From Tubulanus polymorphus (lineage: Eukaryota; Animalia; Nemertea): a stretch of DNA of 64,000 nucleotides. This document shows, one piece after another, positions 42,101 to 61,057 of the stretch. The notes beneath the pieces are model-generated. The model ran no database searches. It saw only the letters and a program-made list of their open reading frames with translations, and was not told the origin of the DNA. Positions within the stretch are counted from its first letter, which is position 1, and each line of letters starts with the position of its first letter. The stretch is from the NCBI RefSeq assembly GCF_964204645.1, contig NC_134030.1:22466210-22530209 (forward strand), given 5' to 3'. The position numbers and the translations under genes are program-made.

Positions 42101-45100
42101 GAATGGGGTCATGTATGATGATATGCGGATGAACTGTACTTACTTTAACACCTGCACGCTGATAAGCTGAAACTAGGTCACGTTTAAAGTGTTCTAGTTT
42201 ATAATCGTACGTATTCGCGACCGGGCTCGGTATTATATTAAACACCGAGAAACCGCTTAGATTCGCCGATAACTTCACGAGAACAGACGTCGTCCCCGGC
42301 GAGCCCTCCGATACGATGATGTTATGAGCGCCCTCGTGTGGTGACGAGATCGTCCTCGCCAGACGACAAATAACTTTTATAACAACCTGCAACAATAATG
42401 ACAATATTAATCAAACACCCTAGTCACATCGAAACTATCATTGTCCCTTTTGATAGGACCTTTAACCATACACCCCCATGTTTTATGGCGACAATTACAT
42501 CTCTTGTAAGAGTCCCTCAAATCATGTACTCCCATCTACATCTATGGTGACATGAGTTTCATGATTCAGAGATTTTCACAATTCTAAAGCATCCCATACT
42601 TTTATTTTTTACATTTTCACTCTGACCCCGGCTACATCGTGAGGCAGCACTAATCATTTCAAATACATTCAAATTTTGTCAGTTGAACTGACATCATTGT
42701 GTTGATGCGTCGGTAAACTCACGTCGTAAAGCGGTAACTGAATTCTCGGATGAGCTTTATTATATTCTTCGATCGCCTCATAAAGTAACGCTCGCTGCTC
42801 ATTCACGTTCATCAACGCCACGTATTTATCGGTGGTCGTGTCCTCATCGGCGTCGAGACTACGCTGATAGTTGCCGGCGGTGACAATACCACTGTCCTGT
42901 AGTTTCACGCTGCTGAATACTGGCTCGTCGACGCTCGTCAACATCTTTATCTATACAAATATTCAATACCCTTAAAATCATTCTGCATCATCTTAGAAAA
43001 TGTTCATTTGCAAGAAATATACACTAGATAGAACTTAACATATAGAATTCTCATTTGCATAATATATGCACTAGAAATTTACATATAGAATTCTCATTTG
43101 CATAATATATGCACTAGACATTTACATATAGAATTCTCATTTGCATAATATATGCACTAGACATTTACATATAGAATTCTCATTTGCAAGAAATATACAC
43201 TAGATAGAACTTAACATATAGAATTCTCATTTGCATAATATATGCACTAGAAATTTACATATAGAATTCTCATTTGCATAATATATGCACTAGACATTTA
43301 CAATATATGCACTAGACATTTACATATAGAATTCTCATTTCCATAACATATGCAGTAGAAATTTAATAGAATTCTCATTTGCATGATATATGCACCAATT
43401 AATTTGCGTAATATATATGCACTAGATATTTAATTATAAGTGATTCATAATTGTCCCATCATCCAAACATCTTAGAATTTACGCATTAAAACCATGTTAC
43501 ATTGTCCAGGTAATCGAAATCTAATATCAAATTTACATCTATTTTGCATGATTTACAGAGTGGGAATACCAATAATCAGGACTCGATCTATTTTCGTAAT
43601 TCATATACTACAAATCTAAATAAATAAATCTCATTTACATAATCTATGCACTAGAAATCGAACTTGCATTAATGGTACATAAACTACATACAGATATACA
43701 TGCACATGTTTGACAACATGAGCATGTTTACACACACAGATGTTTGACAACATGTACATGTATGACAACATGTACATGTTTACAAATACAGATGTTTGAC
43801 AACATGTACATGTATGACAACATGAACATGTATGATAACATGTAAATGGCCGGTGTTACACATACCTGTTCATCGTCGGTGAATACTTTATGAACCGATC
43901 TATTGAACGTCTGCTCGTAACGTTCAACATCGACCGAATTAATCATCCGACATCCGTACGTCCAGTAACACTCGTGTCGCCATAACAACAATAAATGTTC
44001 CAGATTCGGATTCGGTTGCAGCGACAGGCACAAATTCCTACAAATAATGAATGAATTTACCGTACCACGCAAATGAGCTTTCAGAACGCCTGAACCCACT
44101 TCCATAGTTTTAAGTTAAGATTTGACTGAATTTAAGAGTTTCTGAGTTAACTCCAACTTGATGACTGTGGAACAGTGTCCTGGGGCGCCATCTGGTGGTT
44201 TACATGGGGCTGCAGTTGCTCACAAGTTGGTCGGAGTAAACCAGAGGATAGTTGACAATAATCAGAAGTTCACGGTATCCATCCACTGGACCCAGTTCCA
44301 CAGTTGTGAGTTAGAGTTAACTCTGAACTCTGGACCCAGTTCCACAGTTGTGAGTTAGAGTTAACTCTGAACTCTGGATCCAGTTCCACAGTTGTGAGTT
44401 AGAGCTAACTCTGATTTTAAGTTAGTTCATTTTCGATGAGTTAACTCTGAAGTCAAATCTTAACTCAGAACAGTGGAACTGGCTGCGGGTTATCTTCAAC
44501 CAGCTAAATATTAAGTTTATACATACTGTATGAATTGCTGCCAGAAAATGAACAGATGATCATTATTTACCTGAATATAAGTCCGAGGTGTCTCATATTG
44601 AATATATAATGTACGCGTTGCGCTATCGGTAAATACATCGTACGCAGTCTATGTTGTAATTCTATTGTAGTTTGAATCAGCAGCGATAATGTCGTTTTCA
44701 GGTTCTCCGTCGCCAGTTGACTCAAACGCGTCTGAAATAACGTAGAATCAGTAAACAATCAGACGAAACATTTCAGCTACTCCTACTGTGGCAATCAAGG
44801 ATCCTAAACGGCGCTGTGCGAAGCGTAATGGAGGACTTAAAAGGGATCACTAGGTGGCGCAATTGCCAGATTTGAGATTTTAGACATATTGCAAGCATGG
44901 GAAGAGTCTGGAAATTGTTACAATTCATCAGATATCAGATTTCATTATCTAAGATATGAGATATGAGATTTAAGATATCTGCGAGTACCTTCTCGTCAGG
45001 AACGTGTAACCCGGTCGAGGTGCCGGTAGAACCAGCCGTTACAACATCCTGCGCAACGAAGTGTAGATTCAACAAAGTTCCGAAAATCGTCTGCAGATCG

Positions 45101-48100
45101 TCGTTCCTGAAAACAACAACGAAATCAAACCATCGAAATATTCTAAAGAGAAACCTCTTCATTCAATCAGTTTTTAGTGATTGATGACTAAAATTTGTTA
45201 AATGTTCCTCGAACAGGGCCTAGTTTAATTCAAAATTTGAATTAACTGCCGAGAACAACCGTTTGAATGGGAAACAAATTCCATGGAAAAATATTCATTT
45301 TAAGCGCAAACATGAAATTACGTCCGGTTCCGTTACCTTGGATATGGACAGCCAAGAATTGCAAAGTGTCGTAGCAGACGGGCGCTGAGCTTCGAACGAC
45401 CTTGGGCCAAGGTCGGATTGATGGTGGTAACATAGCAGACGTTTTTGATGTAACGCCAGACGTTTGTTTGAGGGTCGTAGAAACCACCATCGTCGATATG
45501 TTGTCGAACCATTTCAACAGCCGTCTGATCGCCATAACGATCCGTCTGCAATATCAATACGTGTGCATGAGTATAAACATGTACATGTGACCAAACATGT
45601 ACATGTATATAAACATGTACATGTGTATAAACGTGTATATGTGCATAAACATGTAAATGTATATATCTTTAGTTCTAATTTGAATAATTTATGCACAACG
45701 AATTTACATCTACATTTCTCATTTGCATAACTTATGCACTAGAAATTTTACAAGTATTCTACAAGTTCTCTTTGATTTATCTTAGAAATTAGAACTTATT
45801 TGCTTGATTTGTGCACTTAGAATCTACATCTCATTTTCTTATTTGCATGTGCTTTCCTCATCTAAGCGAGGGATTCATTTTGATTGTATCTACTCAATCT
45901 ATATTTCCAGATGAGCAATTTGATGAATTCGTCTGCTGTTGTTACCTTAGCGAGGTTAAGGTCATCTATGACGCACATGAGTCGTTTGTTGCCTTTAGGG
46001 ATGAACGTTCGGCCGTGTTTCCACTCTAAACGTTCATCCAGTCGATCGTACAATAATCTACACGTCAAAAACCTTCAAATACAAAAACATTCATCAAATT
46101 CAATTATAGAATTTTTATCCTGTTTGCATTTGGACTTTTTATTGTTTGCGCAGACATTTTTTGTCCCATTCGCATGAACAACTTTTGTCCTGCATTGACA
46201 TTTTTTATCATTTTTGTGTGGATGTTTTTGTCCAGTTTGCTTGGACATTTTTTGTATTTTTGTCCTGTTTGCTTGGACATTTTCTGTCCTGTAAGACAAC
46301 TTGCGGTTGGATGGTATACTTATCTCCCCCTCGCCCCCTATCAATTCAGCACCACGGTTGCGATAAATACCTGTTAGTGTTGACGGTTAAAGCTAACACC
46401 TCTGCCACCTCGCCGGAGCAGACGGTTCGTATTCGTTCGTTGACGATCGATGACTTGCCGCAGCCTCTTTCTCCGATCAACATCACCGGTTTACCGTAGT
46501 CGGATAACAATCCCAACAGATAACCCAACATCTAAAACACAACATAAAACATACATCATTTTCCGATCTGCGACTAATACCAAACAATTGATGATATTTC
46601 AAAGTTTATTCATTCAGGCAGTTTATTTGTGAGATTCCATGAGAGGCTGGACCCAGTTCTACAGTTATGGACGCAGTGCCACAGTTCTAGATCCAGTTCC
46701 ACTGTTCTGGACCCAGTTCCACAGTTCTGTATCCTGTTCCACAGTTCAGGATCCAGTTCCACAGTTCAGGATCCAGTTCCACAGTTCAGGATCCAGTTCC
46801 ACAGTTCAGGATCCAGTTCCACAGTTCAGGATCCAGTTCCACAGTTCAGGATCCAGTTCCACAGTTCTGAATCCAGTTCCACAGTTCTGGACGCAGTTCC
46901 ACAGATCTGTATCCAGTTCCACAGTTCTGGACCCAGTTCTATGGTTGTAAGTTTAAATTTGACTGTAAGGTTAAAACATTGGAACTTAAACTAATTTCAA
47001 ACCTAACCTAACAACCGCGGAACTGGATCTTGTTCCCAGGGATTGGACAATGTAAGGGTGAAGGTCGGGTTATCAGTAGTTACCTCAAATTCAGGAATAT
47101 GCACATACGCGTCGGGTGGAATTCCTGCGTGAGCTGTAGCTGAATACGTTGGCAAACAATCCGACCACGGAACCAAATCATGAGTATCCGAATCAACCAT
47201 ATAGTCAAACAACTAAAAATTAATTGAAAAATATATTTTCATAAAAAATATATGTAATTTCATCAGGAAAACAATGAAATAATTCTTCGCAAGTTTCCAA
47301 GCAAGTAGAAGAGAAATGAAACTTTGTTATTTGAACGTTAAAAAGATTTGGTGAAAAATTTTTAATCTGAAACTGAAATATACATCAGAAAACGGTTAAA
47401 TTTAGAAATTTGAAAAATTCAATAAAAAAAACTGTTTAATTTGAAAATCGAAAAATTCACCAAAGAACTTCGAAAACCAAAAATTCATTGAAAAACTGTC
47501 AGATTTGAAAATTCAAAAATTCCTCGAAAAACTGTTAAATTTGATATTCGAAAAAATATTCAAGCAAGTACTTACAGTGCCCTCTTGTGGATAATCGTGA
47601 TGTTCACCGAATTCGATTTTCCACCAGTTGCTGAAGATTTCTCGTGATTTTTGGTCGAGAGTCGAGCCAAACGTCCAGACAGCGGCCATGATGAAATATC
47701 CTTCAAAATCGCGATCAGACAATTCCGTGTACGGGCCGACTAATGTCTGCAAAATCAATGAATTCCAAGTCAGGGATATATTATTCAAATTCAAATTTTG
47801 CGACGTTCAGGAAGTAAATATCCATCGAAATCAACAATGAAATCGGTTAAAACTTCATCGATGTGAAATTGAAAAATATAATATCCGATCTAGTGGGATC
47901 TCAACCTTATTACTCAAATTATTACTAGAAACAATTGAAATGTTTAATAATTTACACTACCTCAAGGAAACATTTCTGACACTTTCAATTTTTAGTGTGC
48001 ATGGATTTTATATCATCTTTACGCCACAAACTCAGAATGTTTCATCAATGGTTTTGACGTAAATAAAAAATCTACGAACCTCAAATAAAGTCGTAAAAGT

Positions 48101-51100
48101 GCCGATCAGATTCTCGTCGCTTTGCTCGATCGTACGCGTGAACTGCACCATATCGGACGGAGCGCCACCTAGCAGCGGCGGACGAGTCGATAAACGCAGG
48201 TATTCAAGCGCGCGTTCCACGTAGATGTCGCAGAGACGACGTAGTAATTCCTGCTGTAGCGCGGCGCGCGTCTCCAACCACTGAGCCAGAATCAAACGCC
48301 ATCCGACATCTTCTTTATCCATCATCAACACGCCTACATTCGCCAGTAAAGATGGACTCATATCGGCCAGTGTGTCCAACTAGAATTAGAATACAACAAT
48401 GGTACTTGCAGCACACACCAGATAGCACAACAATGCTCTCAGTTGATTTCAATGAACTTTGAACTGCATTCTCAAGCTCCCGAACCCACAGTTACACAGA
48501 TTCAAAATTTTCCAGGCATTTCCAAGTATAAGCAAATTTCAATTTTTCCAACTCAAAATACAAAACTGATACCTTCATACTACATGTTAATGGTGACTGG
48601 TTGATAAAGGTAATTGCTATAGAAAGAGTAGCTAGTGTAAAATAAAATTCGAGAGATTTGTGTGAATTTCTAACAGATCGAGTCCATTCATACCTCCCAA
48701 AGAAATCGTAAAGTATCGCTACAATTCAGACGTTCGCTGTTGGGAAAGACGATCGCCCCGGTCGATGTAAGAACTGATTCCAATAATTCCATCTGATACG
48801 GGTCGGCCTGTAAATATAATCACATATAATTCATTACAAACACAAACTCATGTACACATAGCCAGCAAGAGTAAGAGACCACTAACATGAACTAAGGGCT
48901 AACATGTTTTAACAACTCACATGTAAATGTTTCATCAACTCACATGTACATGTTTAATTAAGGCACATGTAAATATTCCATTAACTCACATGTACATGTT
49001 TTAACATCTCCCATGTACATGTTTTAACATCTCCCATGTACATGTTTTATTATAACTCACATGTACATGTTTTATAAACTCACCTGTCCGTCGAGTTCGA
49101 TTATTTTCATCACTTGTTTAGTTTGGTATTCATATTTGTGACTAGCGATGGATGGACAGCACGCTTTTCTCAACAACGACGGCAAAACACCGTCCTTCCA
49201 GTCCCTGCGAAAAGACAACACACACTTCAAATCAGCAAATCTCTGTGAGTTAGCATTTAAAAAGCAGAATTAGAAATGATATCATAAGATACCAAAAGTT
49301 TCATGAATTTTACAACCAAAAATCCATACGTTAGTAACATTATTTTTGAAAAATAAATTTCTCTAAAAAAAATTCCTGGGCCGGTTTGATAGTTTGATAG
49401 ACCGGTATTAACTTTAACCCGGGGGGTGGCTAACTGAATTCATTATCAATTTATTTAGCCCCTGGGCTAATGTTGATTCAAGTCTATAAAACTGGGCCCT
49501 GATTTATTATCAAACGAAATCAAAGCGTGTGAAAACAATGAACAAGTGTGGCATATGTTTGGGTACACAACCCAAGTGTTCCTCCATAGCAGGAATCAGT
49601 AAAAGGATTGTGAAATTCTAATAATTTCATATTGTGAGATGAGAGGCAGGTAGCGTAGACTTACTTGGTATCCGGATCCATGTATCCAAACAGATCTTCC
49701 GATTCGACCGCTTTCGTGAAAACGCTTTGAACGCTGACGTTTTTACCGCATTCTTTCTCGGCGAGCGCGAACGTTTTAATCACTTCACTCTTACCGCAGC
49801 CGGGCGGTCCTACCACCAATATCTGATCAACAAACAAACCATTCATTGTACAATTCCAGAAAAAATAATATCCACAGGGATATAAACTGCGAAAGCTGGG
49901 CCACAGTTTTCTTGCAATAATAGTTTGCTCAAGTTTTGGAGCAATAATTAGTTTGCTCCAGGTCAAAGTTAGGGCAAGGCCATAAATTTGGAGCAATGAT
50001 GGTTTTCTCGCATCTGAGCATGCCCCATGAGAGTCAAGAGGCAATTTCCTAAGCAATGATTTACATAACATCCAAATTTGGATTACAGTAAAGCAAACTT
50101 GCACTAAGGATTGGAAAATTCAATAAGACCAGAGGAAATTGGAAATAATTTCGTTATTTCGCGTGATTCAGGTTATAAGAGTTTGACTTGAATGTGAGTT
50201 AACTGTTAACAAACCGTTTGATGAGCTGTATTGAGTTGTGCGAGTTGAGCGACGCGACCTTGAAACGCGACGCCCGGCATCAGATTCAACTCGTTGACAG
50301 CGACAGCGATCGCGTCTTCGATCGAGTTTAATTCCTGTTTCTGGGCGTCGGTATACGCGCTGTACTGCGGTACGTCTGGGGTCACCGATATCACCGGGGT
50401 CGTTAGGTTCAATGATTCTAAAAATAGAAATCAAACTATCGTCCTGTTGGGTTCTGTTGCGAGGGTACAGACAGTTAAGGGTCTTACATGAATAGAAATC
50501 AGTCTGTTTGCTGCGTGGGCTCAGGGTTTCTTAAGATTCTTAAGATGAAAAAATGAACTTGTTTTTAACTCCAGATGCAAAACTGTAGAACTGGATCCAG
50601 AACTGTAGAACTGGATCCAGAACTGTAGAACTGAGTCCAAAAGTGTAGAAATGGATCCAGAACTGTGGAACTGTAGCCCAGAACTGTAGAACTGGATCCA
50701 GAACTGTAGAACTGAGTCCAAAAGTGTAGAACTGGATCCAGAACTGTAGAACTGGATCCAGAACTGTAGAACTGAGTCCAAAAGTGTAGAACTGGATCCA
50801 GAACTGTAGAACTGGATCCAGCCAGAACTGTGCAAGTCTTAGCTTCTTTTTCTTATTGTGTATTTTGTCCTGCTGCCTTATAAGAGTCCTCAATCCAGCC
50901 CCATATATGTATATCATACCTCTGAACGACTGATCGCGACTTTTAAGTTTTGATCTCCGATCCGCCTGCTGCGTACTCGGACGAGATTTCAATCCGGTAT
51001 CCATGACGGCGACAACCTCATCGCTGGTCGTCTGCTCATCGTCGTCTGCTCCGGGGACGGTCATCGGGATGTCGACATCAGGCCAGAAATCTTTCAGTAA

Positions 51101-54100
51101 CGTGGCGAATACGCTGCACTCTCGCACCGCGAGCAGACGCGGGAAAAACGCGTTACGCAACGCTGTCACTAGAGCCTCGCTTTCATTCATTACCGATTCA
51201 GCGATTTCCTCGTCTTAAAAATAGAAACAGTATCGGAGTAGTCCACGTGAAAACACCCTTTAAACTGTGTGATTTGGATATTTGAGGAGCCATCCACTAG
51301 AAAAAGGTATCCCTTCATATATTCATGGAGCCTCCCACTAACGAAAAGGTATCAATCACTTCAGATAATCATGGAACCACCCACCCACTAAAGAAAGGTA
51401 TCCCATCGGACATTCATGGAGCCACCCACTTAACAGAAAGGTACCCGCAGAAGGAGATTTTCAAACACTCCTAGTTTAAGACTTGAAATGTGGCTATGCC
51501 TCTGACAATCAGGAATCGGTTGCTCAAAAGTTGGTCGAAGTTAACTGGTTGACATAGCGACAATTTAAAGTCCATCGATACCATGGCATTCCTCCAACTG
51601 TTATCTTTAACCTATTGTTTAGTAACTTCAACCCCAGTCCAAATTGCCTTGTTTTTTGTGTCGAAAATTGTCGATGAATTTTCTTACCTTTTTCTTGCGT
51701 TTCTTGTTCATGTTTTTCTTCATCAATCTCAGCATTACCTTCGGTTTCCTCGGGGATTGTTTCCTCGAGATCGCACTGTTCGGTGGTTACTACGCAAAGC
51801 GGGAATAATCGTTTAATTTGAAATTCGAATAACCATTGAAATTCAAATTCGAATTACCGTTTAATTTGAAATTTGAAAAAAATGTTGAACTCAGAATTTT
51901 TTTGAATGAAAAATTTATCACAAGTTCAGATTTAGAATAACTGAAATTGACAGCTGTAGAACTTGGGTCCTGAGTTCTCTCGATAATCTTGTTACTCTGG
52001 GTCCTTGTGAATGTTCTCGACGATGGAATTCAACTTACCCGGGCTAGAGTTCGATTTATTGGCGAGCTGATCGAGGATGGCTCCAGCCTCGGCGCAGACG
52101 TACTTAAGTGTTCGCGGACTCCAACCGTGAGACCCGTCGTTAGCATCACATCCTGCAAATTTAGAATTCAGGAAAAATCAAATCGCGAGGAAAATAGATT
52201 TGAAATAGTCACAAACTCAGGTACTGTGAAATTGGATCCAGTTTCACAGTTTTGAGTTAGAATTCAACAATTAACCGAAAGAACTGGTAATTGTAAGTTT
52301 GAAATGAAGGTGATTGTTGTTTTGGAATTTACCTAGTCTGATGTTCTTCGAGATCGGTATATTTGTACCGAGAAGCTGTCGACACAAATCGTAAAGTGTG
52401 ACGAGTTTTTGAGCTAGTTCAAATGCTTGCAGGAAACCTGAAATTGAGACATATTTCATTGAAGTTTCTGGTAGTTAAATATTAACAGGTGGACATGGGT
52501 AGATCGAGGGCACTGCTGGGCTGATATTAATTAACATAATGTACTACAATAGAAAATAGTTAATAAATATGTAAATAATTTAGACTTTAAAACTTGTCCA
52601 GCGAGAGTTAAATTAAAGGTATTTTGAAAATAACGGCCAAAAATATGAAAGCCTGGGGGTGAGGTCTGGTGAGGTCAGCCTACATCAAGTGAGGTCAGGC
52701 GAGGTGGTTGCTGATTTCATACAAACCTTGACTAAGCAGTAAAACCTCTACTAGAAGTCTTAAATCCGGTTTAACGACGGCTACAGTTCGGAACTGACCG
52801 AGTAAAGTCTGCGGCAGCGCGGAGATCACCGAATTAAACGACAGCAGACGATCGGGATCGATCACACGCGCCTCCACGCCGTTATCGATCACCGCGAATA
52901 CCGCGCCACCCGCGACGACGGACGTCTCCTCCGAGAGCAACGTCGCCGTCGATTTCGCCGCGCGTAACGCTCCTAAAACCGACGACATCAACTGAGCGAA
53001 CGCGCTCACGACCGGAGCGGCCATCTTGTCGACGCCGTTGAAACAGACCCAACATCCGGTGGCGGCGAGGCCGCGGAATACGTCTTGTAACGAGAATGTA
53101 TCGACGTTACGGTGACTGTTGAACGTGTAGATCGGTTTACCAAGAGATCGGGCTAGTTCACTGACCAGACACTGTTTATCACATCCCTGAAACACAGAGA
53201 GAAAAAACATATACAACTCATATTACAACATGAATACAGATGATAACTAGAAATGTTGCCTTCATGGGCAAAGACATCGTGAAAAAATTCCCCAAACGCC
53301 CGCATCGGTACTTCGACGCGTGATCGTAAAACTGTATAAGGAGTACGTCCCTTTATAATTACTCTAAAACACACATCGGTTTTATTCATAACTTCAGACA
53401 TTCATCCAACAGGCTTCTCGCGCTATGCTACCACAAGATGGCGTTGGGAGTAACGGTCGGTTTTACTGAAATCAGTTACTACGGCTCCTGGATCCAGTTT
53501 TACAGTAAGTAGTTAAAGTTAACTCTGAACTCAGGATCCAGTTCCACAGTTGTGAGTTAGAGTTTACTGTGAACTCAGGATCTGGTTCCACAGTTGTGAG
53601 CTAGAGTTTAACTCTGAACTCAGGATCCAGTTCCACAGTCTTGTGAGTTTGAGTTAACTTTGAACTCAGGATTCAGTTCCACAGTTGTGAGTTAAGAGTT
53701 AACTGTGAACTCAGGACCCAGTTCCACAGTTGTGAGCTAGAGTTTAACTCTGAACTCAGCATCTAGTTAAACAGTTGTGAGTTAAAGTTTAACTCTGAAC
53801 TCAGGAACCAGTTCCACAGTTGGGAGCTAGAGTTTAACTCTGAACTCAGCATCTAGTTAAACAGTTGTGAGTTAGAGTTTTACTCTGAACTCAGCATCCA
53901 GTTCCACAGTTGTGAGATAGAGTTAACTCTGAGTTAAAAATTAGTTCATTTTCAAAAAGGTAAAGAGTCAAATCTTAACTCACAACTGCGGAACTGGGTC
54001 CTGGTAGATCCTTACTCGCCAGGAGTGGAATTCTTGATTGCTGCTGGAGCACTCCAAGAAGCCCATTGACAATCAACAAGGAAACTCATCTAAATTTTAG

Positions 54101-57100
54101 ACAATACCCGAATAGTTATTGAAAAAGACTTTGAACTTACCGCTGGTCCGGTAACAAGGCCACCGTAATGGGAAGAAGAGGCCTGTATAAGACTGAGGAA
54201 CGTCTGTTCGGTGAGATGAGTGACGACTTCACGTGAACTACTGCCCAAATATTCAAAACCGTAATCATATTCCACATCCATACACTGAAAATAATTTGGA
54301 AAAAAAATGATGAAAATGAAAGATTTTATTTCAGATATTTTTTCGTTATTTTGCTTTGTTAAAACTTTGAAACTGTCGGAGTGAATTGTTAAATCATCAA
54401 CAGTTGGTTTCGCTTATTAACTCTTCAGCGCTGAGATCAACATTAATTAGTGCCGCAGTCGTACTAACCTGTATTTTGACGTCGCGATCGTCCGATTTAA
54501 ACGAGTATCTCAGCTGTGATTTCCATTCGAACGTATCGCGTAGAGTTCCGCCTGCGTCTAACACGGCGAGCAGACGTTCGACCAGGTCGCGTTTATGAGC
54601 TAAAATCGCTACGACGCTCGAAATCTTCTGAATTTGACTCGGGAATAAAACAAGTTTATAATCGACCGGGTCGTCTGTTTCCGCTTCAACGACTTCGTCC
54701 TCTTTTTTAAACAGCGGCACGTCCAGGTTCATCGTATCGACAGGTGGCGCTTCAGACGTCGATGGCTCTCGGAGACCTTTAAAAAACAACAACAAATATA
54801 GCTGCAAAGCAGCGATAATGGGTTTTCTGTCTAGCCGCATCCTGAATGATGATATTAATAATAATAACAATCAATATAGCTGCAAAGCAGCGATAATGGG
54901 TTTTTTGTCTAGCAAAAGAGCTATAATGGGTTTTCTGCTTTTATCAGCAGCTCATGGGTTTTCTGTCTAGCAAAAGAGCTATAATGGGTTTTCTGCTTTT
55001 ATCAGCAGCTCCTGGCCCCAAGCGACAATTAAGAGTTCATTGTTACTATAGTATTTATCCACCGGTTATCTTTAATCAATCTTCTAGCAATTGCAGCTGG
55101 GTGTAAAAAGATATTGCATCTTGATGGGAAAATAACCGGAGTGAAATCCTTAATATTCAAAATGACTCCAATTTCACTTTAGTTTCACTTTTATTTCGAG
55201 AAAGAAAATTTTGTAAAAGGTTTTCTTACTTTCCTGTTCGGGATTGTTCACTTGTGACCTGGCGGTTTCTTGGTCTAAAATAGTATAAAATATTAGATCA
55301 AAGCCTTTGAATCAAGTTCTTAATCTAAAGTATGAATTTCGAGACAGGGTGCGTCACTGTTATTTGATTTGCTTTTCCCCTGACTATTCCCTGACATGCA
55401 CGTTGTTCCCCTGATTTGATCTGCTAAGAATCCAATCAATTAACACAGTCAAATACTTAAGACATACCGTAGATGGAAACTGTTTGATTTTATGCGCAAT
55501 CTAATACTCTCAATAAATCCCCCTTATTTTGTACAGAATTCCATGAATATTCCCTGACATTAGAGAAGGAATTTCCTGTTTTCTCCCTGAATTGGGTAAG
55601 TGACACCACCCTGCAACAGAATTTTTGGCATAACGAACTAGATTAGCAGGCCACAGTCGGTTATTCCTGATAATGACCAGGATCCAGTTCTACAGTTTTT
55701 AAAGTTTAGGTCAGCTAACTTCTGATGTTTTAACCGTGGATCCAGTTGCACAGCCGTGACTAAAGACCAAAAGTGGTCTTAGACCTTCAGTCATCTTAAA
55801 TCTTAAGAATAGTCTTAAGTTGTCGGACTGGCTATAGAAGTGTGTTGGTCTTAGACTGGTCTTAAATGTAAGCCCTGACCGTGCACTTAGCCAATGAACT
55901 GTGTAACTGGGTCTTTGTCATATGCGCGTCCCCAAAATATGGATTTAACATTAAGTGCATCTCCCTTTTCCACACAAGTGCAAACAGTTTAAATCCACTC
56001 TAGACTTCAACGGCCGCATTCCGTATTTTCAAGTTAGAATATGTCTTTAGTTTGAATTAGTTCATTTTCAATAACAGTAAAATCATGAGTTCGATTCTAA
56101 CTTGATAATACGAAACAGGGTTCAAAATGAAACGATGTTATCATAACCCACACACAAACACACACAGAAAAAAAAAAACAATCTGCTTCTACAAGAATGG
56201 AATTTGAAGACCGACCACCAAAACATTGAAATTCTTACCCATCCTAAATGTAACCATAGCGTTAGGGCTCGGTTTCAGAGATATTGAAAGCTCTGCATTA
56301 GAAAAATACATATTTCATATTGCTTTAATTGAATTGTATAATAATTGTTCATAGTTAGTATATTGGTTGATAGATTTGTTAATATTTGAGCGGAGTCTAC
56401 TGTATCATCCAACTCAGATATCACTCTCAATTCAAAATATCCGACTTGAGCGGAGTCTACTGTATCATCCAACTCAGATATCACTCTCAAGTCAAAATAT
56501 CCGACTTGAGCGGAGTCTACTGTATCATCCAACTCAGATATCACTCTCAAGTCAAAAGATCCGACTTGAGCGGAGTCTACTGTACCATCCAACTCAGATA
56601 TCACTCTCAATTCAAAATATCCGACTTGAGCGGAGTCTACTGTATCATCCAACTCAGATATCACTCTCAATTCAAAATATCCGACTTGAGCGGAGTCTAC
56701 TGTATCATCCAACTCAGATATCACTCTCAATTCAAAATATCCGACTTGAGTGGAGTCTACTGTATCATCCAACTCAGATATCACTCTCAAGTTAGCAGAT
56801 CCGACTTGAGCGGAGTCTACTGTATCATCCAACTCAGATATCACTCTCAAGTCAAAAGATCAGACTTGAGCGGAGTCTACTGTACCATCCAACTCAGATA
56901 TCACTCTCAAGTTAGCAGATCCGACTTGAGCGGAGTCTACTGTATCATCCAACTCAGATATCACTCTCAAGTCAATAGATCTGACTTGAGTGGAGTCTAC
57001 TGTATCATCCAACTCAGATATCACTCTCAAGTTAGCAGATCCGACTTGAGCGGAGTCTACTGTATCATCCAACTCAGATATCACTCTCAAGTCAAAAGAT

Positions 57101-60100
57101 CAGACTTGAGCGGAGTCTACTGTACCATCCAACTCAGATATCACTCTCAAGTCAAAAGATCTGACTTGAGCGGAATCTACTGTACCATCCAACTCAGATA
57201 TCACTCTCAAGTCAAAGGATCTGACTTGAGCGGAGTCTACTGTACCATCCAACTCAGATATCACTCTCAAGTCAAAGGATCTGACTTGAGCGGAGTCTAC
57301 TGTACCATCCAACTCAGATATCCCTCTCAAGTCAAAAGATCAGACTCTTGAGCGGAGTCTACTGTACCATCCAACTCAGATATCACTCTCACGTCAAAAG
57401 ATCTGACTTGAGCACGGTTTACACCTATTTTTTACATGTTTTTTGCCCAAAAAGTTTGCTGAAAGTTTTATGGTTTTGATGGCAAAAATCCTCCACTATG
57501 GAATTTATTGAAAATATGTTTTTCCTGAATAAATTTCTGATCAATCAATTATGAATGAAATCAAAGCCCATGAAAATAGTGAACAATTGTGGCATATGTT
57601 TTTGATGTACGGTTGGTTTAGTTTTTTGCACGCATCTCTTTTGTTCTATCACAACAGGACTCAGTAAAACTGCTGCGGTAACAGTTTGGATGTATCTATT
57701 ATTGAATTCATGGTTCGGTTGATTTTTTGCACGCATTCTCCGTTTCCCGCGTGGATTTTTTTCAATTCCTGATTCCACAAAAAAAGGATCGATTGTAAAT
57801 TTCTGCTTTGATAATTTCACCCAGTGTGAGATGAGAGGCAGGTGGTGCGGACATAGTCAATATAAACCAATCAGTTTCATCAACATTTCATCAACTTGGA
57901 ATCGTTTGTATTCGAAGGTAAGTTCATCAATCGTAGAGTCATCAACATTGATCTCATATTGTGTAGTTATTGCAACGGACGAATTGTACAAGAAGTAATT
58001 TGACGATTTTCTATTTGTTAAAACTTGATTTTAATTTTAGAAATTTGATGTTTTTGAATTTGTTAACTTTATCTGAAACAGATGTTTGTTTAATGAAATT
58101 TACAAGAAATAATTCTAACATTTTCAAATTGTCAAAAAATTGAAGATATTTTCTGAATTCAATTCTGTTAAGTTTAACTAGCATCAGATGTAGGTTCTAT
58201 GATTAATTATAGATGAATTAAATATTTTTATGACTGCTGAAATTCAGTCCAAATATCACCGATGTATTCGTTCCTATTTCAGCTTCGTAAATTGCTCGTA
58301 TAAATCTGTGATTTGTCGCCGAAACAACTGTTAAAATGATCGGTAAGTTATAATTCTAATTTCACTGTAAACTTGTAAAAACTAATTCAACAAATAGAAT
58401 GAAGATTTTTCTTTCACGAAGGTTAAACAATAATAAAACAGATTGTATTAATTTGTAGCGTCAATGCTGATGAAAATGTTGAGAAGTTTACTTCCGATCA
58501 TGTTGTTAGTGATCAGTTTGTGGTCGATGGTGAACGCTGAAACTGCTGCTGCAGCTGATGATTCAGCTGAAGAACTCGCTCTTAGCCGTCGAAAGAAGAC
58601 GGCTTACGACGAATGGTGGCGTAAAGCCAATGAACAGGCCGGGAATATCTGATTCCACTGTGGTTAAATTATTGATTCCATAGCGGATAAACTGATTCCA
58701 CATCGTGTAATTTGTGTGAATTAATAAACAAAATTCATTGAATGATAAAACATTATTCTGTAGTTTATTTCATGACTGTTTTTATGGCGACTGATTGGCG
58801 ACCTGTGGAATGGAGCCAAAATAGATTCCATTTTCCATCCTAAAACACCTGATATATAAATTTGTTTTAAACAAACATAGCTGCCAGGCGCCATGTTAGG
58901 TTTCTATCAAGGATATTCTTTATTCTATGGAACTCTACGCGATACATTTGACTGGAAATCACTCAGAAAGTTACTCATTTTATCTTCCAACATTTGAAGC
59001 AGCAAGAAATGAGAAACTTTGTAATTTGCATGTAAAAAATTTTTGGAAAAATGTTAAATTCGAAATTGAAAAAAAATCATCAGAAAACCATATTTGCCAC
59101 AAGTTCCTCCACAGAGGGACTCAGTAAAGTTTGCACAGGATATCTTGATAATCCAGCTGTAATCAAATTTCAAGGAATGGATTAAGAAGGATTAGTACTA
59201 ACCTAATTCATCGGGTTTAGGTTCATCCTCATCTAATATAGAACCGGGCATCGACGGTTCACCTCGACCGGTTCTACTCCGCTCCGAGACCGTATCCGTC
59301 TTTTCTTTCAAACTTCCCTTCTGCGAGGCGACTGCGGAAAAAAGTTTTCAGAAAAAAAGTTTTCGTAATTTTCTCAACGCTAGAAAAAAAAATACCCTAA
59401 AGAACAATCATCGAACTCAATCTTGATTGAATATATCCCGGTAAATATTGATGAAGATATAAAAAGTGTCAAGACATTTATTGAATTTGAATGTTTTCAA
59501 ATATGAGTGTTATTCAGATAAATGGTGACATTAGGAGAATTGGTAAAATAACAACAAAATAAGAGTGGATCATTGGAACTGTTTAGGAGATCCAAACGAG
59601 TGTACGTTTTGGAGACACTAACGAATTAGGCAGCCAAGAAAATTCATCCCAATCAGTTGCTTGCCGGTTCAGACTGAATGGAAGATTGTTTGGATGAACC
59701 GGAACCGAATTTCCAATTATGTACTTCGATTTAGAAAAAAAAAAATTCTGTTAACTCGACCGCCGATCAAACAACTATATTTGTACTTCGATTTCCGATT
59801 TTTTGTAAACTCGACCGCCGATCACACATCTCCCGTACTTCCATTTCCGATTTCAAAATCAAACCCCCTGTTTCGCTCCGGACAGGTGTGGTGGGTCTGT
59901 AAGGGACACTCAATCAAAAAATCAAACAAAATTTACCAGCCAAATAAATAACAGGGACAATCCCTATTTTAAGATCAATAAACTGCAACGGATAAAAACT
60001 AACAAGAAATTTAGAGAAAACAGCAATAGATATATGACAAAGGACCACGGTCATGTTTAAGTATATTTTTTACGTTTGGATTATTTCGAAGCAACCTTTA

Positions 60101-61057
60101 TAAAGAACTTTAAATGGCAACCTCCGTCCGGCTGAAAAGCTCAACCTATAAAAAGGGCATTCTGAAATTTGAAAAATCTGCTTTTTGCAGCAATTTCCAA
60201 GCAATTCAAGTCCCGACGCAAAGTGCTTTCTAGCAAATTAATTGCATTGAGAAGTTTCCAGGCAATAAAGACAAAATCTTGCATTTTTTTGTTAAAAAAT
60301 CATCTACCTCGGCTTGTAAAAATGTGCCCTTTTCTACTTTGGGTATGACAAAAAAATATATGAAAAAATGGCGCGAGATTTTCGCGACGCTAGCACGTGC
60401 CCGGCTCGAGCTTGATATATTATACATTATAGTATCTTACCATCGCTGGCCGATCTTCGCTGCTGTTTATCGATGATTGCTTTTTTTCTTTCCCTGGAAC
60501 TATCGAGTCCTTTCAACATGAGCACCGTCGCGTTAATAGTCTCGTTCATTTTACTCATCATCGTCTGAAATGACGCACGATTAATTAGCTAATTACGTAA
60601 TCAATTAACCGAATAGACAAATGAACTATCGATAATTAGATGATTGATTAACTAATTAAGGTATATTTATTACTCTAAGCCTTAAGATTTAACCCACATT
60701 TACTGCGAAAATGAAATAGCCAATGAAACTATAGTGAAACTATCCACACTTAATTAGATAATTGATTTAAGTAATTAAACGCTATTCAAATCAGCTCAAG
60801 TTAATTAAATATTCAATTAACTAATTAATGGAATCAGTCAATTTAACGTACTTGTATCGAATCCTTATTGCCGTCCTCGACAGCCTGTAAAGCGCCCTCT
60901 ACGTGTTCGGTGAGATGTATTTGAGTGACTAGATAAACGATTTCGGTGACGTGGTCTAAAGTCCACGACTGTCCGGTCACTTTACTATCGATTTTGATGT
61001 CCGGCATTTTCGGCATCGATTTCTCCTTCTTCGAGTTGGTCGTTGAAGATTTTTCCG
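17516..61057 (-). CDS. Axonemal dynein heavy chain-like protein (divergent, outer-arm beta-type features), 5'-partial; linker through C-terminus, about 61 exons
   Basis: GT-AG exons read by hand, phases checked at many junctions (high to low): 60852-61057, 60441-60564, 59203-59331, 55230-55274, 54469-54776, 54141-54284, 52727-53186, 52333-52437, 52039-52152, 51688-51789, 50920-51213, 50215-50417, 49665-49822, 49084-49204, 48694-48807, 48080-48379, 47576-47746, 47084-47212, 46371-46531, 45946-46057, 45337-45545, 44989-45106, 44571-44731, 43866-44037, 42723-42950, 42144-42386, 41502-41710, 40749-40918, 40179-40329, 39400-39556, 38566-38670, 38001-38175, 37852-37918, 37393-37560, 37167-37281, 36771-36896, 35994-36213, 35187-35389, 34429-34627, 33901-34050, 33244-33403, 31114-31262, 30473-30840, 29571-29798, 28894-29038, 28141-28444, 27730-27839, 27000-27263, 26382-26677, 26083-26263, 25684-25908, 25012-25274, 23676-23820, 23252-23363, 22506-22791, 21724-21925, 21005-21198, 20513-20655, 19688-19805, 19450-19546, 17516-18906. 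Dynein hallmarks: FEWKSQLRY, YGFEYLG, FRTVAVVKPD, GPPGCGKS (AAA2), WKDG, GERGCGKS and IDDLNL..DRYG..RQHID..NPT..RLLRHF (AAA3), LCNWV (MTBD), YLGPY, WLGGFVNPQSLFTA, WIQAGTALL. The N-terminal tail lies beyond 64000. Confidence 0.93.
19912..20360. repeat. 30-bp minisatellite (agtctactgtagatcagagacaagc...)
   Basis: About 11 units, interrupted by a MITE at 20154-20258. Confidence 0.92.
20154..20258. mobile_element. MITE (family C, GACCCAGTTCCACAGTT TIR), 105 bp
   Basis: TIRs gacccagttccacagtt / aactgtggaaccgggtc with a CTG duplication; inserted into one unit of a 30-bp tandem repeat whose neighbours show the empty site. Relatives at ~33472-33562, ~44288-44484 and ~53488-54001. Confidence 0.88.
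29195..29527. repeat. 33-bp intronic minisatellite (ggccatttgactgatcacctgctgcaagatcaa)
   Basis: About 10 units, degenerate toward the left; lies in the intron between dynein exons 29571-29798 and 28894-29038. Confidence 0.9.
31936..32159. mobile_element. Penelope-like inverted-repeat element with two hammerhead ribozyme motifs
   Basis: 12-bp direct repeat atactttaagct at 31924-31935 and 32160-32171. Internal inverted repeat. CTGATGAT-GGCTAA..TTAGCC-GAAACGTC on the minus strand (32042-32079) and a similar core on the plus strand (32083-32113). Confidence 0.75.
34703..34880. mobile_element. Second Penelope-like inverted element with paired hammerhead motifs
   Basis: Inverted ends aaacccataatatca / tgatattgtgggttt. 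CTGAAGAC-TGGTGGAA-GGA-TTCCACCC-GAAA on the minus strand (34747-34783); the plus copy (34813-34849) has GAAA changed to AAAA. Confidence 0.62.
34932..35040. mobile_element. MITE (gggcccagtttcac TIR)
   Basis: TIRs gggcccagtttcac / gtgaaactgggccc with CAG at both flanks; relatives at ~22052-22174 and ~34228. Confidence 0.75.
38908..39322. repeat. ~220-bp local direct duplication
   Basis: 38908-39097 matches 39128-39321 (agttcagctggtttagaaact...gcaattgagtatctcatt). Confidence 0.85.
39575..39930. repeat. ~76-bp tandem and dispersed repeat (atttgatgatgtcatagggggatttatggaggcagacatc...)
   Basis: About 5 tandem units here; further units at ~20760-20940, ~25292-25620 and ~27620-27690. Confidence 0.85.
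40573..40678 (+). mobile_element. Penelope-like fragment with a near-intact hammerhead
   Basis: CTGATGAT-GGCTAAC-AGTT-GTTAGCC-AAAACGTC (one core mutation), then the reverse complement of ~31974-32040. Confidence 0.6.
41947..42115. repeat. 18-bp minisatellite (gaatggggtcatgataca)
   Basis: About 9 units; explains the TPFCIM and HDPILY ORF tails. Confidence 0.9.
43000..43430. repeat. 41-43-bp minisatellite containing ATTTGCAT
   Basis: About 10 units of tatagaattctcatttgcataatatatgcactagacatttaca. Confidence 0.9.
46648..46941. repeat. 20-bp satellite GGATCCAGTTCCACAGTTC(T/A)
   Basis: About 14 units. The same unit forms arrays at ~29981-30220 and ~41033-41433, and in reverse orientation at ~37702-37818 and ~50581-50832. 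Confidence 0.93.
53488..54001. repeat. Family C MITE with an internal ~41-bp tandem expansion
   Basis: About 10-11 units of gaactcaggatccagttccacagttgtgagttagagtt(t)aactct, ending in a normal right arm (aactcacaactgcggaactgggtc). Confidence 0.82.
56387..57413. repeat. 60-bp satellite, about 17 units
   Basis: Unit tgagcggagtctactgtatcatccaactcagatatcactctcaagtcaaaagatccgact; variation is concentrated in one ~12-bp segment. Confidence 0.96.
57861..57876 (+). promoter_or_regulatory. Candidate core promoter of the nested peptide gene
   Basis: TATAAA at 57861-57866 and Inr-like TCAGTT at 57871-57876, just upstream of the first donor at 57918. Their spacing is shorter than canonical, so only one is likely used. 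Confidence 0.35.
58336..58652 (+). CDS. Nested small secreted peptide precursor (66 aa; signal, acidic pro-region, RRKK, 17-aa mature peptide)
   Basis: Coding exons 58336-58342 (AAAATG ATC G|GTAAGT) and 58459-58652 (tttgtag|CG TCA ATG...) join in frame as MIASMLMKMLRSLLPIMLLVISLWSMVNAETAAAADDSAEELALSRRKKTAYDEWWRKANEQAGNI. An upstream noncoding exon ends at 57917 (AAG|GTAAGT), the acceptor ttcctatttcag precedes 58283, and AATAAA is at 58723-58728. Confidence 0.75.

What the first reader, a model, noticed from the sequence alone, without database searches (positions are those of the whole stretch)
48338..54152. Dynein heavy chain with a catalytically dead AAA1 site: a candidate pseudo-motor
Seen: across the 54141/53186 junction the AAA1 Walker A reads GPAGCDKQ (canonical GPAGTGKT). 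Walker B reads WVCFNGVDK (canonical WGCFDEFNR), so both acids including the catalytic Glu are gone. The sensor-I region (TMNPGYAGR) is replaced by AVIDNGVEAR. The AAA2 motif that donates the arginine finger to AAA1 (SPATVSRxG) reads SPSLLANVG (Arg to Asn at 48338-48340). Established: AAA1 is the ATPase site that drives dynein's powerstroke, and loss of the Walker B Glu or the Arg finger blocks hydrolysis. The ~61 exons show no stop or frameshift that I could find, and the stalk, MTBD, AAA2 and AAA3 P-loops are retained. Inference: a protein kept under selection as a non-motile microtubule binder, such as an axonemal brake, tether or scaffold. Divergent heavy chains such as DNHD1 are known, so class assignment determines how novel this is.
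Basis: partly seen in the sequence, partly recalled or inferred. Interest (0 to 1): 0.85.

Follow-up and report, generated by a model that had tools for sequence, protein, structure and literature searches.

The report
Class-13 dynein with dead motor site
This is an intact dynein heavy-chain gene of a little-studied animal family (Kollmar's "class 13") whose main ATP-burning site has been dead since before corals and bilaterians split, so it probably serves as a non-motile structural or regulatory arm in cilia or sperm tails rather than as a motor.

Summary
These are GPA|GCDKQ across the 54141/53186 junction, WVCFNGVDK, AVIDNGVEAR, and SPSLLANVG with Asn at 48338-48340.

The gene lies on the minus strand. 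It spans about 82 kb, from about 35 kb beyond the window's end down to 17519. It is single-copy, with no stop inside any conserved block and no alternative AAA1 exon.

It is neither DNHD1 nor DNAHX. It belongs to Kollmar's (2016) metazoan class-13 dyneins. These have an outer-arm-beta-type tail, an enlarged AAA5 and a low-complexity C-terminal extension. Orthologs run from corals to frogs; the closest is from a nemertean (about 53% identity).

The AAA1 lesions are family-wide. None of 32 orthologs keeps the Walker B Glu. The AAA4 P-loop is also lost. The AAA2 and AAA3 P-loops and a gap-free stalk/MTBD are kept. The tail is the best-conserved part and AAA1 among the worst, the reverse of canonical DNAH5.

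Best reading: a non-hydrolysing, microtubule-binding heavy chain that assembles into an outer-arm-like dimer. Its partner may be DNAHX (class 12), which this genome also encodes.

The family was already catalogued. Its dead AAA1 appears in none of the papers my searches found. No RNA data were available.

The parts
17519..64000 (-). The part of the class-13 dynein heavy-chain gene inside the window: end of the tail, linker, AAA1-AAA6, stalk/MTBD, C-terminal domain and extension. The gene continues upstream, beyond the window's end, to about extended coordinate 99246.
   Evidence: 50 collinear tblastn blocks to the Lineus ortholog P0220 (residues 1915-5832) lie in the window. A further 33 blocks (residues 1-1896) lie in the next 35 kb.
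54141..54290 (-). Exon ending with the first half of the AAA1 Walker A (…GGLVTGPA). The donor follows 54141. The upstream boundary is approximate.
   Evidence: Sequence. Pfam AAA_6 positions 1-47.
52727..53186 (-). AAA1 large-subdomain exon. It carries GCDKQ (53186-53172), Walker B WVCFNGVDK (53051-53025), the sensor-I region AVIDNGVEAR (52895-52866) and the family-specific insert (52880-52827). Acceptor before 53186; donor GT at 52726-52725.
   Evidence: Pfam AAA_6, E=1e-23. Family alignment A1. AlphaFold2 model with pLDDT 80; the insert (residues 104-121) scores below 50.
52055..52153 (-). AAA1 small-subdomain exon holding the sensor-II position (WSPRTLKY at 52123-52100). Arg is present here; most orthologs have Gln.
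49676..49822 (-). AAA2 exon with an intact Walker A, GPPGCGKS (49810-49787).
48077..48376 (-). AAA2 exon with the degenerate Arg-finger motif SPSLLANVG (48358-48332). Asn at 48340-48338 replaces Arg.
46361..46504 (-). AAA3 exon with an intact Walker A, GERGCGKS (46474-46451). The Walker B CVIDDLNL lies in the next exon (45975-45952).
42144..42395 (-). AAA4 exon with a degenerate P-loop (SEGSPGTTS, 42311-42285). The loss is shared by the whole family.
   Evidence: Pfam AAA_8. Alignment. Coordinates.
37392..38178 (-). Three exons of the distal stalk and microtubule-binding domain: 38178-37957, 37931-37851 and 37562-37392. They are collinear with canonical MTBDs and have no insertions.
   Evidence: Pfam MT. 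57-85% identity to the Lineus ortholog. L-INS-i alignment.
34403..35426 (-). Acidic low-complexity insertion at the start of AAA5 (…GRVLDWSFDE… at 35381-35361, followed by E/D-rich open stretches). This is the 'longer AAA5' of class 13. Exon boundaries were not determined.
17519..18907 (-). Open frame of 463 codons holding the last coding exon, ending at the stop. It encodes a Ser/Glu/Ala/Pro-rich low-complexity C-terminal extension with no Pfam match.

Best explanation
The gene is the intact, single-copy ortholog of the metazoan class-13 dynein heavy chains (Kollmar 2016). This lineage branches nearest the outer-arm beta chain (class 4; DNAH9/11/17) and has the same kind of tail.

Shown:
- The AAA1 site lacks the catalytic Walker B Glu in every ortholog examined.
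- In this species AAA1 also has Gly-to-Asp and Thr-to-Gln changes in Walker A, no sensor-I Asn, and no AAA2 Arg finger.
- The AAA4 P-loop is lost family-wide.
- The AAA2 and AAA3 P-loops, the stalk and the MTBD are kept.
- The beta-type tail is the best-conserved region.

Inferred:
- The head cannot run the AAA1 ATPase cycle, so it produces no powerstroke.
- AAA3 carries D-D, as in the canonical axonemal chains aligned, rather than the D-E of the cytoplasmic dynein-1 row. The protein may therefore have no hydrolytic site at all and may bind nucleotide only structurally at AAA2 and AAA3.
- Through its conserved tail it should assemble with intermediate and light chains and a class-3-type partner chain into a two-headed, outer-arm-like complex.
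- Its conserved MTBD should contact microtubules largely independently of ATP turnover.
- It would then act as a static cross-bridge, anchor or regulator in cilia or sperm flagella.
For: Class assignment:
- Summed tblastn score is 4193 bits to the Lineus family member, about 380 bits to canonical beta chains, at most 140 bits to DNAHX-type proteins and about 40 bits to DNHD1.
- In a maximum-likelihood tree of AAA1-AAA4, the family plus the window's AAA1 exon form one clade (100*). The exon is sister to Lineus (95*). The family's internal branching broadly follows animal phylogeny.
- The tail of the Lineus ortholog matches outer-arm beta chains along its whole length (722-550 bits). It matches DNAH5 at 209 bits, with its best stretch in the linker.
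- The window gene's tail exons are 40-87% identical to that ortholog.
- AAA5 is 515-643 residues against 417-451 in canonical chains. The 12 bilaterian orthologs aligned have C-terminal extensions of 121-694 residues. The window's own extension lies in the 463-codon open frame 17519-18907.

Dead site:
- Family alignments.
- AAA3 and AAA4 states.

Selection:
- No stop inside any conserved block.
- Single copy.
- In taxon-matched sets, class 13 shows tail 49-51% and AAA1 35% identity. DNAH5 shows tail 53-56% and AAA1 86.5%.
- The first 450 tail residues have 67% mean column identity across 20 species.

MTBD: gap-free against canonical stalks.

Not a replacement for the normal arm: canonical beta and DNAH5-type genes exist elsewhere in this genome.

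Literature:
- Class 13 definition and the proposed 12/13 heterodimer: PMC5100056.
- Non-motile DNAHX and DNHD1: 10.1101/2025.01.18.633724.
Against: - There is no transcript evidence for this locus. No RNA run holds it. The one possible RNA run gave nothing.
- Exon boundaries come from tblastn blocks, and I built no spliced model.
- Loss of ATPase activity, microtubule binding, complex formation and axonemal location are all inferred from sequence.
- The Walker A Lys and a sensor-II Arg are present in this species, so some nucleotide binding at AAA1 cannot be excluded.
- In the motor-domain tree the family does not attach directly to class 4. It joins DNHD1 with 29% support, which is probably long-branch noise. 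Descent from the beta chain therefore rests mainly on the tail.
Confidence: 0.72

Rival explanations
1. The gene is a decaying 'ghost' or pseudogene copy of an outer-arm beta chain, and the motif losses are neutral decay.
For: AAA1 is poorly conserved within the family (35% identity). The Walker A sequence differs between lineages. No RNA evidence exists for this locus.
Against: - 83 collinear blocks have no stop inside conserved sequence.
- Orthologs exist from corals to frogs, and their tree follows the species tree.
- The tail is conserved almost as well as that of canonical DNAH5.
- The sensor-I insert is itself a conserved motif, NP(E/D)KLL.F.S.
Confidence: 0.03
2. It is still a motor. 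ATP is hydrolysed at AAA1 by non-canonical residues, or another site (AAA3) drives a working cycle.
For: The Walker A Lys and the sensor-II Arg are present here. The AAA3 P-loop, Walker B D-D and sensor-I Asn look the same as in canonical axonemal chains. The stalk, MTBD and linker are retained.
Against: - No family member has the Walker B Glu.
- In this species the Walker A Gly and Thr, the sensor-I Asn and the Arg finger are also gone.
- From established AAA+ and dynein knowledge, mutating the AAA1 Walker B Glu abolishes motility, and no dynein is known to be driven from AAA3 alone.
- AAA1 shows relaxed constraint.
Confidence: 0.07
3. It is an ortholog of DNHD1 (class 11) or of DNAHX (class 12), the two non-motile heavy chains already described.
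For: Like DNHD1 it lacks the Walker B acids. Like DNAHX it is over 5000 residues long and occurs in many of the same animals (22 genera in both my hit lists), with no mammal, bird, non-avian reptile, insect or nematode among either family's members in my capped searches.
Against: - DNHD1 proteins score about 40 bits against the window and form a separate clade.
- DNAHX itself (P0266 = XP_041462850.1) belongs to a different clade that is sister to DNAH5/8 (100*).
- The DNAHX clade keeps Walker B (seven of the eight members aligned keep an acidic pair), has Thr-to-Val in Walker A in three of eight members including DNAHX itself, has a longer AAA4 and lacks a Pfam MT domain.
- This genome has its own DNAHX-type gene on another contig.
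Confidence: 0.01
4. Canonical AAA1 motifs are supplied by an alternative, mutually exclusive exon hidden in the large repeat-filled introns.
For: The Walker A is split by a 954-bp intron full of repeats. Other introns are also large.
Against: A permissive tblastn with a canonical AAA1 module and with family AAA1 modules finds only the one exon set. Six-frame motif scans find no second G..G.GK[TS] or DE-type Walker B in context. No second copy exists elsewhere in the genome. The protein models of the 32 orthologs aligned carry the same lesions.
Confidence: 0.01

Closest known systems
Class-13 dynein heavy chains (DHC13) of Kollmar 2016, Mol Biol Evol 33:3249 (PMC5100056)
   Same: - All family hits in my searches are from animals.
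- The N-terminal tail is homologous to the outer-arm beta chain (class 4).
- AAA5 is longer than in canonical chains.
- There is a non-conserved, low-complexity C-terminal extension.
- The family is catalogued as a set of bona fide, uninterrupted genes.
All of these are met here.
   Different: That paper states that the ATP hydrolysis sites were not analysed. It assumed the heads 'cause different axonemal bending characteristics'. Here AAA1 is shown to lack the catalytic Glu family-wide and AAA4 to lack its P-loop. That argues for a non-motile head.
DNAHX (sea urchin XP_041462850; apparently Kollmar's class 12), Chai et al. 2025, bioRxiv 10.1101/2025.01.18.633724
   Same: It is an oversized (over 5000 residues) outer-arm-derived heavy chain. 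Its AAA1 motifs are degenerate and vary between lineages. It is reported from sponges to frogs and absent from reptiles and mammals. In my capped searches both families have members from cnidarians to frogs, 22 genera appear in both lists, and this genome encodes both genes.
   Different: - DNAHX descends from the DNAH5/8 lineage.
- It keeps Walker B and binds ATP.
- Its stalk/MTBD is disrupted, and it has a pre-sensor-II insert in AAA4.
- The window gene has a beta-type tail, lacks Walker B, and has a gap-free stalk/MTBD and an AAA4 of normal length.
DNHD1 (class 11, 'orphan' heavy chain; needed for sperm flagella in humans and mice)
   Same: It is a divergent heavy chain lacking the Walker B catalytic residues in AAA1.
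   Different: There is no specific sequence relationship (about 40 bits). It forms a separate clade. In the rows aligned, the tail is shorter (676-1084 residues against about 1600, some from partial or low-quality models) and the C-terminal extension is at most 17 residues. It occurs in amniotes (alligator, crocodile and turtle hits; the human protein is discussed), where my searches found no class-13 member.
Canonical outer-arm beta heavy chain (class 4; DNAH9/11/17; Chlamydomonas beta)
   Same: The closest solved structures for both the motor and the tail belong to this class. The domain order is identical.
   Different: Canonical chains have GPAGTGKT, CFDEFNR, TMNPGY and SPATVSR, are about 4450-4600 residues long, and have AAA1 as their best-conserved module. 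This genome has a separate canonical beta gene at C4:2.04-2.05 Mb.

Membership tests
Class-13 dynein heavy chain (Kollmar 2016) | Forms one clade with the family; distribution restricted to Metazoa | tested here: met
   The family plus the window's AAA1 exon form a clade (100*), with the exon sister to Lineus (95*). Every named hit scoring as a family member, well above the canonical chains, is from an animal, cnidarians to amphibians.
Class-13 dynein heavy chain (Kollmar 2016) | N-terminal tail homologous to the outer-arm beta (class 4) tail | tested here: met
   The tail of the Lineus ortholog (residues 1-1900) hits beta chains at 722-550 bits over residues 7-1555. It hits DNAH5 at 209 bits, with its best stretch in the linker. 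The window gene's tail exons are 40-87% identical to that ortholog. One tail exon searched alone hits only beta-type chains, weakly.
Class-13 dynein heavy chain (Kollmar 2016) | AAA5 longer than in canonical chains | tested here: met
   The family has 515-643 residues against 417-451 in canonical chains. The insert is an acidic stretch just after CC2. The window has the matching …LDWSFDE… plus E/D-rich stretch at 35426-34403.
Class-13 dynein heavy chain (Kollmar 2016) | Unique low-complexity C-terminal extension | tested here: met
   The 463-codon open frame holding the last exon (17519-18907) is Ser/Glu/Ala/Pro-rich and has no Pfam match. The 12 bilaterian orthologs aligned have extensions of 121-694 residues; canonical chains have 0-1.
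DNAHX / class 12 | Clade with XP_041462850, sister to DNAH5/8 | tested here: not met
   P0266 is XP_041462850.1. Its clade (100*) is sister to class 3 and excludes the window's family. DNAHX-type proteins score at most 140 bits against the window.
DNAHX / class 12 | Walker B retained, Walker A Thr-to-Val, AAA4 pre-sensor-II insert, disrupted stalk/MTBD | tested here: not met
   The window has F-N-G where Walker B has D-E, and GCDKQ in Walker A. AAA4 is about 295 residues in the family, against about 340 in DNAHX-type proteins. The stalk/MTBD is gap-free and Pfam MT is detected.
DNHD1 / class 11 | Specific sequence similarity and clade membership | tested here: not met
   About 40 bits against the window, compared with 4193 bits for the window's own family. 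DNHD1 forms a separate 100* clade. Its join to the family has only 29% support.
Canonical outer-arm beta chain (class 4, DNAH9/11/17) | Canonical AAA1 motifs (GPAGTGKT, CFDEFNR, TMNPGY, and SPATVSR in AAA2) and a length of about 4.5 k residues | tested here: not met
   All four motifs are degenerate. Near-complete ortholog models are 5.1-6.6 k residues long, with shorter partial models also present. A separate canonical beta gene lies at C4:2.04-2.05 Mb.
Hydrolysis-competent AAA+ site (applied to AAA1) | Walker A GK[T/S], Walker B hhhhDE, sensor-I Asn, trans Arg finger, sensor-II Arg | tested here: not met
   Walker A reads GCDKQ: Lys is kept, but Gly-to-Asp and Thr-to-Gln are changed. Walker B has N-G in place of D-E. 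The sensor-I Asn is lost and an insert follows. The Arg finger is Asn. Only the sensor-II Arg is present. Actual ATP binding and hydrolysis cannot be tested with these tools.

The most novel reading that the evidence does not exclude
Class 13 is the unidentified second heavy chain of 'dynein-X'. DNAHX (class 12, DNAH5/8-type tail) and DHC13 (beta-type tail) would together form a paralogous outer-arm-like heterodimer. Both heads would be catalytically dead. One (DNAHX) cannot bind microtubules, and the other (DHC13) keeps a conserved MTBD and acts as the anchor.

This would confirm Kollmar's 2016 tail-based prediction. It would also define a whole non-motile dynein complex present from cnidarians to amphibians, with no amniote, insect or nematode member among my hits.

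Supporting hints:
- Members of the two families appear in 22 shared genera and in this genome.
- The second dynein-X head has a normal extended stalk and no AAA4 insert, as class 13 does.
- Lytechinus variegatus encodes class 13 as two split models, XP_041470146.1 and XP_041471110.1. These could have been missed, or counted as the minor 'DNAH9', in that study's mass spectrometry. That last point is speculation.
Probability: 0.3. Interest if true: 0.75.

Novelty: new member of a known kind. Interest (0 to 1): 0.5.

Why it matters
Non-motile 'pseudo-motor' dyneins have only just been recognised (DNAHX in 2025; DNHD1 in human infertility). A third catalogued but unstudied class has carried a dead AAA1 since before the cnidarian-bilaterian split. 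That makes catalytic death a repeated, stable outcome of dynein duplication rather than a curiosity.

It also gives a concrete, testable candidate for the unidentified partner chain of dynein-X. The pattern is a conserved beta-type tail and MTBD, relaxed AAA1 and lost AAA4. It predicts a passive, microtubule-binding arm in the cilia or sperm of the animals that carry it; the DNAHX authors link that distribution to external fertilisation.

For annotation, these genes are currently labelled 'dynein beta chain', 'DNAH9-like' or 'uncharacterized'. They should not be counted as motor-competent outer-arm chains.

Tried and rejected
- **Complex prediction.** I ran the first 513 residues of Lineus class 12 with the first 450 residues of Lineus class 13. 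The verdict was 'no answer' (score 0.00, the partner's own fold uncertain, my alignments not used). It counts neither for nor against binding.
- **RNA evidence.** No RNA run holds the locus. The single run guessed to be RNA laid nothing. Only DNA contigs were obtained, so transcription and the 54141/53186 junction remain unconfirmed by reads.
- **Solved DNAHX structure.** None was found by sequence in the PDB copy, so no direct structural comparison was possible.
- **Neighbouring gene as DNAHX.** I first suspected that the neighbouring dynein gene on the same contig might be DNAHX, in a head-to-head pair. Its AAA2 exon is canonical DNAH5, so I dropped the idea.
- **dN/dS.** Not attempted. The nearest available ortholog is about 53% identical in protein, so synonymous sites are saturated. 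I used taxon-matched per-domain identity instead.
- **Spliced model.** All searches, alignments and the fold used single exons by reference, or database orthologs.
- **Earlier scan notes.** They contained nothing on the class or motifs of this gene.

Full report
**Observation**

The finding lies in a minus-strand gene. The exon upstream of the junction ends ...GGA CCA GCG|gtaagt at 54141. The next exon starts after ...ttcag| at 53186 with GGA TGT GAT AAA CAG. The AAA1 Walker A therefore reads GPA|GCDKQ.

The other motifs are at these coordinates:
- Walker B reads WVCFNGVDK (53051-53025).
- The sensor-I region reads AVIDNGVEAR (52895-52866).
- The AAA2 Arg-finger motif reads SPSLLANVG (48358-48332), with Asn at 48340-48338.
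- The AAA2 P-loop (GPPGCGKS, 49810-49787) and the AAA3 P-loop (GERGCGKS, 46474-46451) are intact.

Pfam places AAA_6, AAA_5, the AAA lid, AAA_7, AAA_8, MT, AAA_9, AAA_lid_11 and Dynein_C on successive exons. Contigs from three DNA runs of one study cover the AAA1 exon without a single differing letter, so the lesions are not assembly errors.

I add two points. The AAA4 P-loop is also gone (SEGSPGTTS, 42311-42285). The sensor-II position carries Arg in this species (52123-52100).

**Extent and integrity of the gene**

tblastn with the closest ortholog (Lineus longissimus XP_064650622.1, P0220, 6044 aa) gives 50 collinear blocks in the window, covering residues 1915-5832. A further 33 blocks lie in the 35 kb beyond the window's end and reach residue 1. 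The gene therefore spans about 82 kb.

The blocks cover 5195 of the 6044 ortholog residues. The gaps correspond to poorly conserved insertions. Every '*' lies at a block edge or within an intron-bridging gap.

The AAA1 exon is exactly 53186-52727, with a GT donor at 52726-52725 and the next acceptor before 52437. A permissive search of the window with canonical and family AAA1 modules, plus six-frame motif scans, finds no second AAA1-like exon. The genome holds no second copy.

Everything was done exon by exon by reference, or on database orthologs.

**Which dynein it is**

The AAA1 exon finds only divergent relatives among 1.8 billion representative proteins. These come from Capitella, Saccoglossus, a newt and a lungfish. 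Searches seeded from those relatives reveal a family of 5.1-6.6 k-residue proteins, along with shorter partial models. They are labelled 'dynein beta chain, flagellar outer arm-like', 'DNAH9-like' or 'uncharacterized'. The family occurs in:
- frogs, salamanders, lungfish, sturgeon and gar
- amphioxus and hemichordates
- echinoderms
- molluscs, annelids, a brachiopod and a nemertean
- corals

Summed tblastn scores against the window separate the candidate families clearly:

| Query | Summed bits |
|---|---|
| Own family (Lineus) | 4193 |
| Canonical beta chains | about 380 |
| Second long family ('DNAH5/8-like') | at most 140 |
| DNHD1 | about 40 |

That second long family contains P0266, which is XP_041462850.1. 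This is exactly the sea urchin DNAHX of Chai et al. 2025.

A maximum-likelihood tree of AAA1-AAA4 gives the following:
- The window's family plus its AAA1 exon form one clade (100*).
- The exon is sister to Lineus (95*).
- Branching inside the family broadly follows animal phylogeny.
- The DNAHX clade (100*) is sister to DNAH5/8 (100*).
- DNHD1 forms its own clade.
- The join of the window's family to DNHD1 has only 29% support and is probably long-branch noise.

The window's family matches Kollmar's (2016) class 13 on every stated criterion:

| Criterion | Result |
|---|---|
| Metazoan-only distribution | All family hits are from animals |
| Tail homologous to outer-arm beta | 722-550 bits to beta chains along the whole tail; 209 bits to DNAH5, with its best stretch in the linker. 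Window tail exons are 40-87% identical to the ortholog |
| Longer AAA5 | 515-643 residues against 417-451, through an acidic insert just after CC2, present in the window at 35426-34403 |
| Low-complexity C-terminal extension | 463-codon Ser/Glu/Ala/Pro-rich open frame holding the last exon, 17519-18907 |

Kollmar's text is quoted. It says explicitly that the ATP hydrolysis sites were not analysed.

**The lesions are ancient and family-wide**

In an alignment of the exon with 32 orthologs, none has the Walker B Glu. The position reads FNN, FNK, FNG, LNN, FDN, ISG and so on.

The other AAA1 motifs behave as follows:
- Walker A varies by lineage. Two of the three corals aligned keep GKT. Most lophotrochozoans have GK followed by L, F or Y. 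Ambulacrarians have Arg in place of Lys. Vertebrates have GKK or GKR. This species has DKQ.
- The sensor-I Asn is replaced, and an insertion of up to about 21 residues follows. The insertion is itself conserved (NP[E/D]KLL.F.S).
- The Arg finger is lost in the lophotrochozoans, in corals and in some deuterostomes.

The AAA4 P-loop is lost in all members. The AAA2 and AAA3 P-loops are kept in all members. AAA3 Walker B is D-D, as in canonical axonemal chains.

An AlphaFold2 model of the exon has a normal AAA+ alpha/beta core (pLDDT 80). The insert (residues 104-121) has low confidence.

**Where selection acts**

I compared taxon-matched sets: nemertean, mollusc, crinoid, cnidarian and vertebrate.

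| Region | Class 13 identity | Canonical DNAH5 identity |
|---|---|---|
| Tail | 49-51% | 53-56% |
| AAA1 | 35% | 86.5% |
| AAA3, AAA4 and stalk/MTBD | 47-48% | 72-78% |

In canonical DNAH5, AAA1 is the best-conserved module and the tail the worst. In class 13 the order is inverted.

The first 450 tail residues show 67% mean column identity over 20 species. The stalk, MTBD and CC2 align to canonical chains without gaps. They are 57-85% identical between this gene and Lineus. Constraint therefore sits on assembly (the tail) and on the microtubule-binding apparatus, not on catalysis.

**Mechanism (inference)**

Without the catalytic Glu, AAA1 cannot hydrolyse ATP. In this species it also lacks the Walker A Gly and Thr, the sensor-I Asn and the Arg finger. 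This follows from established AAA+ and dynein knowledge. No powerstroke cycle is therefore expected.

AAA2 does not hydrolyse ATP in canonical dyneins (established knowledge; its Walker B region has no Glu in any row). AAA3 has D-D. AAA4 has no P-loop. The chain may have no ATPase activity at all.

The beta-type tail predicts binding of intermediate and light chains and pairing with a class-3-type chain. The conserved MTBD predicts microtubule contact. I therefore favour a static or regulatory outer-arm-like arm (a cross-bridge, anchor or assembly template).

This genome also has a canonical beta gene (C4:2.04-2.05 Mb). It has a canonical DNAH5-type gene about 49 kb upstream, head-to-head. It also has its own DNAHX-type gene (C1:28.327-28.332 Mb). 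Class 13 is thus an addition to the normal outer arm, not a replacement.

**Most novel reading**

Kollmar proposed from the tails that classes 12 and 13 form a heterodimer. Chai et al. found that DNAHX pairs with an unidentified second chain that has a normal extended stalk and no AAA4 insert. Class 13 fits that description.

In my capped hit lists the two families share 22 genera, and this genome has both. L. variegatus encodes class 13 as two split gene models. A complex prediction for the Lineus N-termini gave no answer. I put this pairing at about 0.3.

**Known or new**

The family is catalogued, and many orthologs sit in the databases. This locus is therefore a new member of a known kind. 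Non-motile dyneins are already a recognised concept.

My full-text searches returned only Kollmar 2016 for 'class-13' together with dynein. No returned title points to a study of this family's AAA1, and I did not open the papers from the Walker B search. The family-wide dead AAA1, the lost AAA4 and the inverted conservation profile therefore appear to be unreported. Within the limits of that library, they are a modest but real addition.

**Limits**

There is no RNA, protein or localisation evidence. Apart from the AAA1 exon, exon boundaries are approximate.

Noticed in passing
beyond the window: G000:C6 about 22,614,300-22,671,330 (+ strand; extended window coordinates 148099-205122; loci L009-L015): A second dynein heavy-chain gene lies head-to-head with this one. 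Its start is about 49 kb from this gene's first exon. Its AAA2 exon is about 140 bits to human DNAH5, so it is the canonical outer-arm class-3 chain, not DNAHX. I did not test whether this adjacency of a class-13 and a class-3 gene is conserved in other species.
   Followed up: partly
G000:C1:28327242-28332444 (- strand), outside the window: This is the genome's own DNAHX-type (class-12) gene. Several of its exons are 62-84% identical to the oyster family member. Both non-motile outer-arm paralogs are therefore present in this genome, on different contigs.
   Followed up: partly
G000:C10:12846195-12848699 (- strand), outside the window: A further dynein locus has only weak AAA_6 matches (56 and 32 bits). 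It may be another divergent heavy chain, for example a DNHD1/class-11 relative. I did not classify it.
   Followed up: no
window 53422-54012 and 50467-50860; similar stretches at about 46613-46990, 41055-41468, 37646-37899 and 29833-30169: The introns of this gene carry arrays of one short repeat family. In one frame it reads like ...GTGSRTVELDPELWNWIQNC.... Word depths in the DNA runs reach the thousands to tens of thousands, so it is a very abundant dispersed or tandem repeat. One array fills the intron that splits the AAA1 Walker A.
   Followed up: no
window 1464-13149: A cluster of C-type-lectin-like open frames (…WNDVPC…AICSKPC…) is repeated three times downstream of the dynein gene. The scan has already noted it (s1-529215).
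   Followed up: no
public databases: In Lytechinus variegatus, the species used for the DNAHX study, the class-13 gene is split into two RefSeq models on one contig: XP_041470146.1 (2115 aa) and XP_041471110.1 (4257 aa). In S. purpuratus it is named 'dynein heavy chain 9, axonemal' (XP_030834564.1, 5936 aa). Such labels could hide the protein in proteomics tables.
   Followed up: no
extended coordinates about 75,100-78,600 (11 kb beyond the window's end, inside this gene): The only sizeable tail stretch of the Lineus ortholog not matched here (residues 1564-1624) falls between blocks at 78988 and 74595. I did not examine it.
   Followed up: no
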